Assembly: GCF_026571515.1 (NCBI RefSeq)
Contig: NW_026853829.1
Coordinates: 248,001-312,000 of the forward strand
Direction of reading: 5' to 3'
DNA: 64,000 nt
From: Ruditapes philippinarum
Taxonomy: Eukaryota
Notes under the pieces: model-generated
The model's input: only the letters and a program-made list of their open reading frames with translations
Told to the model about the DNA's origin: nothing
Database searches by the model: none
Position numbers and translations under genes: made by a program
Shown here: in pieces, positions 22,681-61,685 of the stretch
Position numbering within the stretch: the first letter of the stretch is position 1
Layout: every line of letters begins with the position of its first letter

Positions 22681-23361
22681 AAGACATCAACAATAATTTT
22701 ATTTTGATTTATTGTTTTGGTCTTGTAAACTCTTGTATGTGCGCATGATCAAATTCAATTAGACCAATCTTATTTTATTTTATGCTTTTGAGTGGATTAC
22801 TGATTTATCCGTAAAATAATATCTGATAATTTCACAGTGAAAATTATCATAATATAATCTCATACTTTTCAATGACGAGACTATTTTTAAAGATTTTCCC
22901 CATGTGGTACCTCATATTTATTTTTTGCTGACAATTCCGACATTGTCAGTGCTGTGTAGAGAAAAGCAAAGCTGAAATTGATACATAACTTAAATTTCAA
23001 AAGAAGTAAAAAACAAAACTTACTTCAATTCATTCAAATTTCCTATCACCAAATAATTATCATCTTTTTGTTTCATTTTTACGGTATGAAAATACACTTC
23101 CTTCTACATGCGCATTCTGGTGGCATTTCGCTGCATCATTTATGAACATCAATAAAAAGAACTAGAATTCTACAGCTTACCTAAGTCAAACGAATATCAA
23201 TATTATATCGATGTTTTTCTGTTTCACGGTAGTTTTTGACTTGTAGTAATTTTGGAGTCTGATACCTGCGTTGTACACGCGATCTGATTGGATGTCCAAT
23301 ACATACAGGATACTAGAATAAATTTAATACACCAGCTAAGCAGACGCATATGTATACACAA

Positions 23362-24328
23362 AATAGATAAATACAGAGTCCCTAAAGAAAGCTCAACACG
23401 GCAAAATTGAAAATGTTGCAGGCTCGGTTTGATTGAGCCTGTTCATGGACGGTACTGGAAAGTGCAAGTTACCGTCCACGCCCCCTAGCACCGGCTTAAG
23501 CAGAATTAAACATTTAAACGTGAAATAGTAAAATTTTGAATTTAGAAACATCCGCAGATGTGTTCATACGGCGGTTATCATGGAACCTTCAATGTGACAC
23601 GTCCGTGCCATTCCATGAAAAGCGGCGTATGGTCCCCAAGTAATAAAAAGCGTGTGCCCTAAACGAGAAAACAATGGGCGGAACTAAATAAAATGGAATT
23701 TTGAAAGGGGATCAGAGGTTACAAGGTTTGTTTGTGCCGTGTGGAGGCTGTAAAAAGTCGCCCCGTACATTCAATCAGAGATGTTATATTTCCGATCCTT
23801 AAAGATCGTTCAGCACGACATTATTGTTGTGCTTGTGGTATTTTTAGTTTTAACTTTTCGGCATTTTCTAGTTTGGTGGTTCCAATATTCTTACTTGAAT
23901 AATGTTCAATCACCCTTAGGATATGTTGCCTGCTTTTTAACTTTGTCTTTTGACATCTTATCTGATATGCAGGCTTCATAACCTTTCAAAATTCCATTTT
24001 ATTTAGTTCCGCCCATTGTTTTCTCGTTTAGGGCACACGCTTTCTATTACATGGGGACCATACGCCGCTTTTCATGGAATGGCACGGAAGTGTCACGTTG
24101 AAGGTTCCATGATAACCGCCGTATGAACACATCTGCGGATGTTTCTAAATTCAAAATTTTACCATCTCATGTTTAAATGTTGAATTCTGCTTAAGCCGGT
24201 GCTAGGGGGCGTGGACGGTAGTTTGCACTTTACAGTACCGTCCATGAACAGGCTCAATCAAACCGAGCCTGCAACATTTTCAATTATGTTGTGTTGGACT
24301 TTCTTTAGGGATTCTTATTTTCTCTATT
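23362..24328. repeat. Family A inverted pair: antisense copy 23362-23720 fused to longest sense copy 23721-24328
   Basis: The outer ends are reverse complements (AATAGATAAA... / ...TTTCTCTATT) and 23980-24328 mirrors 23362-23720. Confidence 0.88.
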
Positions 24329-24474
24329 CTACAGTGGCTTCAACAAAAAAATGCGCTTTTCTTCTGCAAATGTGAATAAAATATAGCACTAATTTTTCTC
24401 TCCAACAAAAGGGGTCCTTCGTGTACTCTACTTTCAGTCGACAAAATGTCATACATTTTCTAAAATCCTGTTAA

Positions 24475-24955
24475 AATATGATAAACAAGATCAACAAGGA
24501 AAGGCGGCGTTCAATGAACGCAACCCCCACATGACCCAGCAACATTGGAAATTATTTTCTATAATGATGAGCCACAACTTTAAGAAAAATTGGGTCATGT
24601 TTACACCGCTAATCAAGTAAAGGAAAAATTATCTGATTGTATACTAGACATATGATTGTTGTGCAAGTCAAAACTCTCAAAAGCTTAACTAGGAATAAAA
24701 CTTTAAGTGTATCAGTCCATCTGCGCGTGTTTCTAAATATTTCATGTAAAATGTTGAATTTTGCTTAAGCTAGTGATAGGGGGCGTCGACTTTAGCTTAC
24801 ACTGCGTTCATTGAATGCCGCCTTTCCTTGTCGATCTTGTTTATCATATTTTACACTTCCGAGTACCGTTTATGAACAGGCTCAATCAAACCAAACCTGC
24901 GACATTTTAAATTTTGCCGTTTTGGGCGTTCTTTAGGGATTCTTTATTGCTCGAT
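24475..24955. repeat. Family C copies (24475-24543 minus; 24804-24850 plus) and a decayed family A copy (24715-24955) interrupted by family C
   Basis: Motif GTTGCGTTCATTGAACGCCGCCTTTCCTTGTTGATCTTGTTTATCATATT; TTACACT is duplicated at 24797-24803 and 24851-24857. Confidence 0.8.
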
Positions 24956-54406: not shown

Positions 54407-54830
54407 ATTGATGCAAGCACTATTAAGTGTGGGTATGGAGTACCGCTCAAGCCGGTGCTAGAGGGCGTGAGGGATGTTGCACATTTTTATTTTCCCTCAT
54501 CAAACCGAATCTGCAACTCATTTGTAATTGTGTTGTAATTAATGCTTTCGAGGGATCACTTTGTTTTCAGATTTTTATACTTCACAACAGCAGGTGTCAA
54601 GTGATGTGTGGCAGCTGTCAAACGTTGCCCGTACTTCACTTCAGTGTTGTTATATTTTTCTGGTCCTTCGGGATCATTGATGCCAGCGAGAATTGAGAAC
54701 CCGGTGCTAGGGTGCGTGAAGGATGTTGCACATTTTCATTATCCCTAATGTACAGACTCAAGCAAACCCGATTCTGCAATTCTCTTGTAATTTTGGTGTG
54801 ATAACTGTTTCCGAGGGATAACTTTTATAT
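54407..54830 (+). repeat. Family B structured repeat (about 1.5-2 tandem units; left piece at 48626-48651)
   Basis: Reverse complement of the 60245-60692 array; split by the ISL2EU insertion. Confidence 0.85.
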
Positions 54831-55719
54831 CAAGCTATGACTTTCAATGGCAACCATTGACTTCCTTCAATTGCAACCACTGAATTTCCATAGCAACCAT
54901 AGACTTCCATAGCAACCGGGGACTTCAAATAGCAATTGTTGACTCTCATAGAAACCTCTGACTTTCCAATGCAAAAATTTACTTTCCATAAGAACCATTG
55001 ACTAAAGTTAGCATCAGTGCGTCTTTACGCAACGTTTACATTGCGCAAATGGCGTTTCGTTGAATGGTTAATACACTAGTGTATTTTTTTTTTAATCTGA
55101 TAAGTTGTGTATGAAGCTCATGATAATGTGATATTATACCAATGTCCATTTAAATTTGAATTATTGTAGTGACAATGAATTATTTATATAAATTTCAAAT
55201 TTCGTTTGCTTCGCTCTGAAGAATAATTTATGTATTTCTTTTCATTATATGCATGTTTTTGCAAAGACATTCACCATAAAACAAGTGATACTTTATTGAT
55301 ACGGTTGACATAAATTTGATCAGCCTACGCTTTATTTAGAATGTTCATCTCCTATCTAATTCATTTTTGATCAGCAGATGTTTTACGACGTATGCTTATT
55401 ATAAACAATGGCACTAATAAATCTGACTGGTTAATGATGAAATAAGATTCTCTAGATAATATCATTACAATACCCAATACAAAATGTATATTGAAAATTG
55501 ATTTATTTTTTCAGAAATTATTAACAGATGTAAGACGAAGCTAGTAATTGATGGACGGTTGATAAAGATATAATATGACGGGACATATTGTAACTGTCAA
55601 AGATTATAGATATTAAGGTGGCATCATTAGATTGTAAATCAAGTTACTGTTTATTTATTGATATACATTAATCTTGTGACAGGGGTTTGTCGGTTGGTTA
55701 ATTGCCAAATTATGGTAGA

Positions 55720-60244: not shown

Positions 60245-60692
60245 AATAAAAAAATCTGGAAACAAAGTGATCCCTCGGAAGCATTAATCACAACAAAATT
60301 ACATAAGAATTGCAGACTCGGTTTGATTGAGTCTGTACATGAGGGATAATGAATGAGTGCAACATCCTTAACGCCCCCTAGCACCGGCTTGAGCGGTACT
60401 CAATTCTCAACACTTAATAGCGCTGGCATCAATGATCCCGAAGGACCAGAAAAATATAACAACACTGAAGTGAAGTACGGGGCAACTTTTTACAGCTGCC
60501 ATACAGCACTTGACACCTGCTGTTGTGAAGTATAAAAATCTGGAAACAAAGTGATCCCTCGGAAGCATTAATCACAACAAAATTACATAAGAATTGCAGA
60601 CTCGGTTTGATTGAGTCTGTCCATGAGGGATAATGAAGGAGTGCAGCAGCCCTCACGCCCCCTAGCACCGGCTTGAGCGGTACTCAATTCTC
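60245..60692 (-). repeat. Family B tandem array, 284-bp period, ~1.6 units
   Basis: AGAATTGCAGACTCGG at 60306 and 60590; the units are nearly identical. Confidence 0.9.
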
Positions 60693-61685
60693 AAACCATC
60701 CATAGTTCTGTATTAGAGTAAATTCCAATGTAATTAATATCGGATATGGTATATCTGAGATGATATAAATTTGAAAATTTAACAACTATTTCAGGAAAGA
60801 CATTATTTATGTTGTAGACATAAAGTAGGAAATGTTTCGTGGTGTACATGATAACAGACTTATACAAAATAAATGAGTAAATCAAGTAGTTTAGGTAAAC
60901 TTTAACTGAAAAGAATTATTTAAATTTCAATATGAGTTATAACAAAACAAATTCATCTTACTATCATTACCATTTACAGAAGCATTTACAACGTAAAAAC
61001 AAATTTACTGCTATGGAAATGACCACTAAAACGAAGGTACATTTGACATTGTTGATATCCTTTATCTTTCTAACTTGTTGCGTTCATTGAACGCCGCCTT
61101 TCCTTGTTGATCTTGTTTATCATATTTTGTGTAAATCATTACAAAAAAATGATTTTTATCAAAGTTATCTAATTAACAATATTCAATTTTTTTAAGGTAT
61201 AGGAGTAACAGTTTTTTCGCGGGTATGTTTGAAAGACAAATCATCACCCTAAACGTCATACGGTGACTTTCAAGCTCTACTGGTCGAGGTCATTTGAGAA
61301 TAATATTCCTTACAGTCTGAAAGTTGGTACCAAAAGGCTAATGTAATATTTCATAATAATGATGTCAATAGTTTTGCATTTTCAATTCCACGCTTGATAT
61401 TGTATCACGAGTTGTTATGTTATTAATTCTAAAATATATAGAACTGCCAAGTCATTTTTACAAAGAATATTTTATATATTGACAATCATATATAACATAG
61501 CTATCAAAATAAATGTGATAATATCGGCATTTCACCATTTAAGTTTAATTTAACAATTTGGAAAACACCGAATTTGCCATAACAATGCCGATAATTTCTT
61601 AATAAATAGAACAGGATTATGTTTTAAACTGAAGAAAAAAATTAAGTTTTGAAAGTGAAACATTTACATACAAATACTGTAAACA

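What the first reader, a model, noticed from the sequence alone, without database searches (positions are those of the whole stretch)
23734..23816. Second shared structured domain with a possible long-range pairing to the first
Seen: A reads GUGCCGUGUGGAGGCUGUAAAAAGUCGCCCCGUAC...GUUAUAUUU..GAUCCUUAAAGAUC..CAGCAC. B (minus strand ~60510-60420; plus strand 54600-54690) reads GUGCUGUAUGGCAGCUGUAAAAAGUUGCCCCGUAC...GUUAUAUUUUUCUGGUCC-UUCG-GGAUC...CAGCGC. B has a cUUCGg tetraloop and several G-U pairs that only form on this strand. The conserved YGCCCC is complementary to the conserved, otherwise unpaired GGGGCG of the downstream domain. The two domains are ~360 nt apart in A but nearly adjacent in B. 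Inference: the two domains form one tertiary unit and B is a minimal version of A.
Basis: partly seen in the sequence, partly recalled or inferred. Interest (0 to 1): 0.8.

Follow-up and report, generated by a model that had tools for sequence, protein, structure and literature searches.

The report
Retroposon 5' RNA module pairing with tail

Summary
23734-23816 (D2) recurs at 60510-60420 (-) and, in an older copy, at 54600-54690 (+). It is the best-conserved block of a non-coding retroposon seen as a 630-bp family A and a 285-bp family B in this genome, and as a 276-bp family C in a second species from a metagenome.

The proposed YGCCCC:GGGGCG pairing is not supported. Both motifs are invariant. 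The only variable base (Y) covaries with its partner in the local hairpin. Six-base complements occur by chance 8-44 times per unit.

D2 splits into two parts:
- An extended 5' hairpin, with 6 of 20 pairs showing compensatory change.
- The 5' strand (23794-23821) of a 22-29 bp long-range helix. Its partner (24286-24313) lies just 3' of the first domain, 18-22 nt from the fixed 3' end.

The long-range helix is kept in all three families by compensatory changes. Cognate duplexes fold at -29 to -36 kcal/mol against -11 to -23 for non-cognate ones, and the helix forms on the sense strand only.

The element behaves like a hammerhead-less, Penelope/retrozyme-like non-autonomous retroposon. Earlier follow-ups of this scan reached that family-level reading on other DNA of this genome. 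Family B is indeed a minimal version of A. Function is inferred, not shown.

The parts
23728..24331 (+). Near full-length family A copy (unit positions ~15-630) that holds the finding
   Evidence: Unit boundaries come from 28 genomic copies. This copy is placed by blastn to the unit.
23733..23784 (+). D2 part 1, an extended 5' hairpin. UGUGC:GUACA forms the stem and GGAGGCU/AGUCGCC (23743-23762) the apical hairpin Pa, with two bulged C. GAUGU (23780-23784) pairs with leader ACAUC, which this 5'-truncated copy lacks.
   Evidence: RNAalifold on 13 sequences from A, A', B and C gave 20 pairs, 6 with compensatory change.
23759..23764 (+). Four of its bases (CGCC) belong to the local hairpin Pa and the last two C are bulged.
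   Evidence: Column 235 (Y) covaries with column 222 (GC:10, AU:6) in Pa. In the long-range model it gives only GC:11/GU:6.
23785..23793 (+). Conserved unpaired stretch UAUAUUUCC (UAUAUUUUUC in B and C), which resembles a TATA box
   Evidence: It is invariant across families and unpaired in every fold.
23794..23821 (+). D2 part 2, the 5' strand of the long-range helix: box GAUCCUUAAAGA, a 2-nt internal loop, then GUUCAGCACGACAU
   Evidence: Present in the MFE and centroid folds of window:23709-24335. The duplex is 26 bp with 5 G-U pairs, -36.0 kcal/mol on the sense strand and -19.3 on the antisense.
24175..24279 (+). D1, the 'first domain': a multi-helix junction whose helices covary strongly
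   Evidence: Compensatory change occurs in 5 of 8 and 3 of 7 pairs of its two hairpins. The closing helix covaries.
24206..24211 (+). GGGGCG motif of D1, the proposed partner of YGCCCC
   Evidence: Invariant at family level. Mostly unpaired in the B fold.
24286..24313 (+). 3' strand of the long-range helix in the tail: AUGUUGUGUUGGAC, UU, then box UCUUUAGGGAUU
   Evidence: It is the reverse complement of the D2 box, differing only by wobble-compatible changes.
24314..24331 (+). U-rich single-stranded 3' terminal tail ending at the family's fixed 3' end
   Evidence: The fixed 3' end ...CUCUAUUUUA is shared by the copies.
23360..23721 (-). Inverted 5'-truncated family A copy that abuts the 5' end of the + copy
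   Evidence: 347-nt inverted repeat, 94% complementary. The copy is placed.
60250..60694 (-). Family B insertion of 1.56 units. D2 lies at 60510-60420, the 5' strand of the long-range helix at 60448-60415, and its 3' strand at 60301-60268.
   Evidence: The terminal unit folds at -96.7 kcal/mol, z -5.3, with the helix in both MFE and centroid. The antisense strand folds at -65.6, z -1.1.
54429..54800 (+). Older, diverged family B copy. D2 lies at 54600-54690.

Best explanation
D2 is the conserved 5' cis-acting RNA module of a non-coding, hammerhead-less retroposon that behaves like a Penelope-like or retrozyme-type element. Its marks are a fixed 3' end, ragged 5' ends, head-to-tail concatemers and an inverted 5' neighbour.

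D2 has two parts:
- An extended hairpin near the 5' end of the unit.
- The 5' strand of a 22-29 bp long-range helix. The other strand lies in the tail, immediately 3' of D1 and 18-22 nt before the 3' end.

The helix closes the body of the RNA, meaning D1 and, in family A, a 355-nt insert. It also places the 5' hairpin and the single-stranded 3' end side by side.

Shown here: the helices, their conservation in two species, their compensatory changes and their strand specificity.

Inferred: this composite 5'/3' platform is what the mobilising reverse transcriptase (probably of a Penelope-like element) recognises. Holding the two ends together may favour end-to-end template switching, which would give the concatemers with a uniform junction.
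For: Family behaviour:
- Copies have a fixed 3' end and ragged 5' ends that run through a uniform unit junction.
- Exact 22-mer counts are 358 for the junction, 447 for the leader, 407 for D2 and 1268 for D1.
- B insertions inside A copies show 5-6 bp target duplications.
- A third family (C) in another species has the same layout.

Conservation: D2 is the most conserved block of the unit.

5' hairpin:
- 6 of 20 pairs carry compensatory change.
- The Pa hairpin shows G-C <-> A-U.

Long-range helix:
- It is the longest gap-free complement in each unit, at the same alignment columns.
- The Pc box centre (the D2 box, nominally a hairpin loop) UUAAA/UUCG/UCAG is matched in the tail box by UUUA/CGAG/CUGA.
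- Cognate duplexes fold at -35.5/-33.9/-29.2 kcal/mol against -11 to -23 for non-cognate pairs, with z of -9.1/-7.1/-4.8.
- The sense strand is 15-19 kcal/mol stronger than the antisense, with 5 G-U pairs in each family.
- The helix appears in the MFE and centroid folds of A, B and C.
- A distal segment covaries in RNAalifold.

Context:
- No tRNA head was found and no Rfam family matched.
- GIY-YIG (Penelope-type endonuclease) matches are abundant in the genome.
- Naiad-type PLEs of clams lack hammerheads and form partial tandems with an inverted 5'-truncated neighbour (PMC8557442).
Against: - Only three deep lineages (A, B, C) from two species carry the covariation.
- The box is nearly palindromic, so it can also form a local hairpin (Pc), which has one compensatory pair of its own.
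- A one-base register slip in family C stopped a column-wise count of the box with the standard tool.
- No RNA evidence was obtained. The one true RNA-seq run showed very low, two-stranded coverage running on into unique flanks. The two deep 'RNA' runs look like Hi-C DNA libraries.
- The mobilising element was not found.
- The functional role is inference only.
Confidence: 0.55

Rival explanations
1. One reading: YGCCCC of D2 pairs with GGGGCG of D1 as a pseudoknot-like tertiary contact that makes the two domains one unit.
For: - The two motifs are complementary (6 bp, or 8 of 9 when extended) and invariant in A, B and C.
- The G-run is mostly unpaired in the B fold.
- Two C of the CCCC run are bulged and free.
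Against: - There is no covariation. The only variable column is explained by the local hairpin.
- Subfamily A' breaks the pair and is not compensated.
- The pairing excludes hairpin Pa, which has a probability of ~1, and itself has a pair probability of ~0.
- Six-base complements are expected by chance.
Confidence: 0.07
2. D2 is conserved mainly at the DNA level as an internal Pol II promoter (the TATA-like UAUAUUU plus a downstream initiator-like GAUCA) rather than as an RNA fold. Penelope keeps its start site and promoter in the upstream partial copy in a comparable way.
For: - The TATA-like block is invariant and unpaired.
- Four of 46 independent B copies start 27-31 nt downstream of it.
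- The PLE precedent is in PMC8557442.
Against: - Compensatory changes and sense-only G-U pairs need an RNA-level constraint.
- No such 5'-end cluster is seen in family A.
- The same B cluster sits at the 3' edge of the long-range helix and fits a reverse-transcriptase pause equally well.
- This reading could hold alongside the RNA model.
Confidence: 0.15
3. The junction-enclosing structure (long-range helix, 5' hairpin and conserved loops) is a new self-cleaving or ligating RNA that replaces the hammerhead of retrozymes and yields unit-length or circular RNA.
For: - The architecture is retrozyme-like without a hammerhead.
- The junction is uniform.
- About 20% of D2-bearing A copies start at unit positions 1-19.
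- The ends are held together by the helix.
Against: - No known ribozyme core is present.
- No RNA ends were seen at the junction in the reads laid.
- About 80% of copies read through the junction.
- A fixed 3' end is expected from any 3'-end-specific reverse transcriptase.
Confidence: 0.08
4. No function: A, B and C simply share recent ancestry, and D2 looks conserved by chance or by mutational coldness.
For: The whole units are alignable.
Against: - Conservation is strongly block-wise, 65-68% against 9-38%.
- Differences inside helices are compensatory or wobble-compatible.
- The distal helix segments differ in sequence yet still pair.
Confidence: 0.08

Closest known systems
Metazoan non-LTR retrozymes (Cervera & de la Pena 2020, PMC7229834)
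   Same: Short non-coding units (150-450 bp) in head-to-tail arrays, dispersed and highly self-paired. They are found in molluscs alongside Penelope-like elements.
   Different: No hammerhead ribozyme: there is no Rfam hit even at E<=10 and no conserved CUGAUGA...GAAA core. No circular RNA has been shown. Family A is 630 bp.
Penelope-like elements, especially hammerhead-less Naiad PLEs and their non-autonomous derivatives (Craig et al. 2021, PMC8557442)
   Same: [quoted passage not shown] Naiads lack canonical hammerheads and are abundant in clams. GIY-YIG matches are abundant in this genome.
   Different: The unit has no ORF. No sequence link to an autonomous PLE was obtained here. The conserved 5'-3' long-range helix did not come up in the two PLE/retrozyme papers consulted here by term search (PMC8557442, PMC7229834).
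SINEs with highly conserved central domains in bivalves (PMC11481361, PMC4758252)
   Same: Abundant non-coding retroposons with domains conserved across species.
   Different: No tRNA, 5S or 7SL head. T5 runs lie inside the unit. Insertion is as concatemers. The conserved blocks are terminal, not central.
5'-3' cyclisation or panhandle helices of RNA replicons, and the two-site (5' and 3') RNA recognition of R2 elements (from general knowledge)
   Same: Long-range pairing or dual recognition brings the template's 5' and 3' regions together for the polymerase.
   Different: This is an analogy only, with no homology and no experimental support here.

Membership tests
Metazoan non-LTR retrozyme | Short non-coding units in head-to-tail tandem arrays, dispersed in the genome | tested here: met
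   Insertions are 1.2-5.4 units long in B, up to 4 units in A, and tandem in C.
Metazoan non-LTR retrozyme | Type I hammerhead ribozyme in each unit | tested here: not met
   Rfam found nothing at gathering score on the window and nothing relevant at E<=10 on an A trimer or on B. A CUGAUGA occurs only in family C, without a following GAAA.
Metazoan non-LTR retrozyme | Expression as unit-length circular RNA | tested here: inconclusive
   Only one true RNA-seq run could be laid. Depth was very low, on both strands, and there were no ends at the junction.
Non-autonomous Penelope-like element | 5' truncation, partial tandem (pseudo-LTR) and an adjacent inverted 5'-truncated copy | tested here: met
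   About 80% of leader-bearing A copies continue into an upstream tail.
Non-autonomous Penelope-like element | Sequence similarity of the 3' end to an autonomous PLE in the same genome | not tested
SINE | Pol III head derived from tRNA, 5S or 7SL | tested here: not met
   ARAGORN found no tRNA-like gene in A, B or C loci. Rfam gave no 5S or 7SL hit. A T5 run lies inside D2 of B and C.
Known self-cleaving ribozyme classes (hammerhead, HDV-like, twister, twister-sister, pistol, hatchet, hairpin) | Match to the class covariance model | tested here: not met

The most novel reading that the evidence does not exclude
The helix-closed junction module is the hammerhead-free functional counterpart of the retrozyme ribozyme. 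It consists of the tail box paired with the D2 box, enclosing the 3' end, the 5' end, the 5' hairpin and the invariant UAUAUUU loop. In this reading it is either a new self-cleaving or self-ligating RNA, or a scaffold that lets a host ligase or the reverse transcriptase join ends. It would give circular or rolling templates in bivalves.
Probability: 0.08. Interest if true: 0.85.

Novelty: new variant of a known kind. Interest (0 to 1): 0.5.

Why it matters
Retrozymes and Penelope-like elements are usually explained through their hammerhead ribozymes. Here a very abundant, young family spreads as concatemers without one: at least 1268 exact D1 cores and 407 exact D2 cores for one subfamily. It is conserved between two bivalve species. 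A long-range helix that ties the 5' module to the 3' tail, kept by compensatory change, gives a concrete and mutable handle for two open questions. One is how such elements are recognised by their reverse transcriptase. The other is how the head-to-tail arrays with an exact junction arise.

Tried and rejected
- **Rfam:** nothing on the whole window or, in sensitive mode, on an A trimer and on B.
- **Known ribozymes:** hammerhead, hairpin-ribozyme and twister resemblances recalled from memory were not borne out by the covariance models or by conservation across families.
- **tRNA-like head:** none.
- **Viral contigs:** no match.
- **RNA evidence:** runs X22 and X23, labelled RNA-seq, show GATC ligation junctions and equal strands. 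I read them as Hi-C-like DNA, so they were not used as RNA evidence. X24 was too shallow.
- **ORFs next to family C units:** one has no Pfam family and the other is a host IIGP GTPase.
- **Column-wise counting of the box helix:** this failed because family C is shifted by one base. RNAalifold on a MAFFT alignment therefore drew the local Pc hairpin instead of the box helix. Per-family duplex analysis was used instead.
- **Promoter idea:** the 5'-end clusters (n=46) are only suggestive.
- **Literature:** motif strings gave only chance primer matches.
- **L110:** a D2-like fragment without D1 in this metagenome contig is a single copy embedded in another repeat, not a D2-only family.

Full report
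**1. Observation**

The A copy (23734-23816, +) and the B copy (60510-60420, -) are identical in 67 of 92 aligned columns. The stretch at 54600-54690 (+) is a separate, older B copy, 92% identical to the minus-strand one and lacking one C of the CCCC run. The D2 core matches only these places in the window, with 0 expected by chance. The cUUCGg loop in B is there.

**2. What the repeat is**

The genome is a 1.4-Gb eukaryote assembly. Earlier notes of this scan call it a clam, and the sequencing runs that hold the element are labelled with one coded organism and 'mollusc metagenome'.

- *Family A.* D2 lies about 20 nt from the start of a 630-bp unit, and D1 about 60 nt from its end.
- *Copy structure.* Copies share a fixed 3' end (...CUCUAUUUUA). 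Their 5' ends are ragged and usually run through an exact unit junction into a partial upstream unit.
- *Copy numbers.* Genome-wide exact 22-mer counts are 358 for the junction, 447 for the leader, 407 for the D2 core and 1268 for the D1 core. About a third of copies therefore reach D2. About 80% of those continue upstream across the junction.
- *Family B.* This 285-bp unit behaves the same way, with insertions of 1.2-5.4 units. B insertions inside A copies show 5-6 bp target duplications.
- *Window arrangement.* The window's A copy abuts an inverted 5'-truncated copy.
- *Family C.* A metagenome scan found about 55 contigs from another species. They carry a 276-bp family C with the same order (leader, D2, linker, D1, tail) and the same behaviour.
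- *Core size.* The A core (D1, tail, leader and D2 across the junction) is about 275 nt, the size of a B or C unit. A is therefore a B-like core plus a ~355-nt insert between D2 and D1.
- *Negative searches.* No Rfam family matches, there is no tRNA-like head, and T5 runs lie inside the unit.

This combination is what is described for Penelope-like elements and their non-autonomous derivatives, including the hammerhead-less Naiads of clams (PMC8557442). It also fits retrozymes, except for the missing hammerhead (PMC7229834). GIY-YIG matches are abundant in the genome. Earlier follow-ups of this scan reached the same family-level reading on other pieces of this genome. My searches agree with them.

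**3. Is D2 special?**

In a three-way comparison of A, B and C:

| Block | Three-way identity |
|---|---|
| D2 5' hairpin | 68% |
| D2 single strand plus box | 65% |
| D1 | 62% |
| Linkers, leader and 3' end | 9-38% |

**4. The proposed YGCCCC:GGGGCG pairing**

I tested it on a 19-row alignment of A, A', B and C.

- Five of the six pairs never vary. The sixth (the Y) gives GC:11, GU:6 and AU:1, that is, change on one side only at the family level.
- The same Y column covaries properly (G-C in A and C, A-U in B) with its partner in the local hairpin GGNRGCU/AGUYGCC. A B subfamily has reverted both sides.
- Subfamily A' changes the G of YGCCCC with no change in D1.
- The pairing shares four bases (CGCC) with the local hairpin. 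That hairpin has a probability near 1 in A, B and C, in linear or circular form, while the long-range pairs have about 0.
- Perfect 6-mer complements occur 8-44 times per shuffled unit.

The pairing is not supported. A minor contact through the two bulged C cannot be excluded.

**5. What D2 is made of**

*(a) The 5' hairpin.* RNAalifold on 13 sequences gives an extended hairpin of 20 pairs, 6 of them with compensatory change. The pairs are:

- leader ACAKC with GNUGU of the conserved UGUUAUAU block;
- a short variable helix;
- the apical hairpin Pa.

*(b) The long-range helix.* The rest of D2 is the 'Pc' box plus about 16 nt downstream (window 23794-23821). This is the 5' strand of a long-range helix. 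Its partner lies in the tail at 24286-24313, immediately 3' of D1 and 18 nt before the 3' end.

- In each family this is the longest gap-free complementary run of the unit: A 12 bp, B 13 bp, C 12 bp, at the same alignment columns.
- The tail box equals the reverse complement of the D2 box apart from transitions that give G-U pairs on the sense strand.
- The centre of the box, nominally the Pc hairpin loop, differs between families (UUAAA, UUCG, UCAG). It is matched in the tail by UUUA, CGAG and CUGA.
- The distal segments differ in sequence and length between families yet still pair.
- The helices measure 26, 25 and 22 bp in the duplex windows used for A, B and C, with 5 G-U pairs in each family; the full fold of the B unit extends it to 29 bp.
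- Energies are in the table below.

| Family | Sense duplex (kcal/mol) | Antisense (kcal/mol) | z against shuffles |
|---|---|---|---|
| A | -36.0 | -19.3 | -9.1 |
| B | -33.9 | -14.4 | -7.1 |
| C | -34.2 | -17.0 | -4.8 |

In the cross-family test, cognate tail and D2 segments give -35.5 (A), -33.9 (B) and -29.2 (a mutated C copy) kcal/mol. Non-cognate pairs give -11 to -23.

- The tool folds put the helix in both MFE and centroid for the B unit (-96.7, z -5.3), the window's A copy (-185.5, z -6.7) and a C unit (-89.4, z -3.2).
- The antisense B unit is unremarkable (-65.6, z -1.1).
- RNAalifold on B plus C recovers a distal segment with compensatory change in 3 of 5 pairs, and also the closing helix of D1.
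- It draws the local Pc hairpin for the box only because MAFFT shifts the family C tail box by one base. The same shift spoiled the column-wise count.

**6. Architecture**

Read from the 5' end, the RNA has:

- a short leader;
- the 5' hairpin;
- an invariant unpaired UAUAUUU(UU)C;
- the long-range helix, which encloses the variable insert and the D1 junction;
- 18-22 U-rich unpaired bases at the 3' end.

In a multimer, the same helix can form across the junction and enclose the 3'|5' joint. So the two 'domains' do belong to one fold, and B is a minimal A. The link, however, is the tail box, not the G-run. The 355-nt insert of A sits where it breaks no helix.

**7. Function (inferred)**

The likeliest role is a composite 5'/3' recognition platform for the mobilising reverse transcriptase. 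A possible second role is holding the ends together, so that the enzyme can switch from the 5' end to a 3' end and make concatemers with an exact junction.

The 5' ends of 46 independent B insertions show small clusters at the 3' edges of the predicted helices: unit positions 56-62, 102-110 and 228-232. Another cluster falls at the G-run (156-162). This fits reverse-transcriptase pausing, but the sample is small and the windows were chosen after the fact.

A DNA-level promoter role for the TATA-like block could hold as well. A ribozyme role has no support so far.

**8. RNA evidence**

- Runs X22 and X23, labelled RNA-seq, have GATC ligation junctions and equal strands. I read them as Hi-C-like DNA.
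- The true RNA-seq run X24 gave very low, two-stranded coverage that runs on into unique flanks. These reads come from A fragments inside host transcripts.
- One RNA-seq contig of X15 spans tail, junction and D2.
- No ends were seen at the junction.

**9. Limits**

- Only three deep lineages from two species carry the covariation.
- The box is nearly palindromic.
- No partner element and no experimental probing are available.
- The metagenome hits were selected with a pattern containing GCCCC. The invariance of that motif among them is therefore partly by construction. The unselected neighbouring units show the same invariance.

Noticed in passing
L007:900-2950 (runs X22, X23): Two runs labelled TRANSCRIPTOMIC RNA-Seq show thousands of chimeric reads joined at GATC sites (GATCGATC) and equal coverage of both strands. 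They look like Hi-C/DpnII DNA libraries, not RNA.
   Followed up: partly
L060:1236-3284; L046; L040: Family B insertions sit inside family A copies with 5-6 bp duplications of the A target. In L060, two neighbouring A copies both carry a B insertion at A position ~265. This is either a composite unit that was duplicated or a preferred target.
   Followed up: partly
L110:2176-2350: A diverged D2-like piece without D1, in a metagenome contig, lies between two 21-nt direct repeats (ACATCTCTTYAATTTATATTA). That motif recurs in about ten other contigs of the same species as part of another repeat.
   Followed up: partly
L121:5500-5900; L107:2700-3100: In a variant of family C, the second hairpin of D1 is replaced by a different perfect hairpin (GAAGCCAAUNNAUUGGCUUC), and the sequence then runs into unrelated DNA.
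   Followed up: no
window 54836-54990: Directly after the older B copy there is a run of about seven imperfect ~22-nt repeats (GACTTYCMWWRGCAACCAYW-like), a minisatellite.
   Followed up: no
window 24472-24522 and 24803-24853: A 51-nt inverted repeat, 96% complementary with 280 nt between the arms, lies just downstream of the A copy. It encloses a diverged A-like tail piece and may be another small element.
   Followed up: no
B unit positions 156-162 (for example L041, L033, L050): Four of 46 independent B insertions have their 5' end inside the GGGGGCG run of D1, where about 1 is expected. This is unexplained. Possible causes are a block to the reverse transcriptase or microhomology joining.
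   Followed up: partly
G000 genome-wide: At least 139 GIY-YIG (Penelope-type endonuclease) matches pass the Pfam cut-off, many of them in open frames of 400-800 aa. Autonomous PLEs are therefore plentiful and probably recent in this genome.
   Followed up: no
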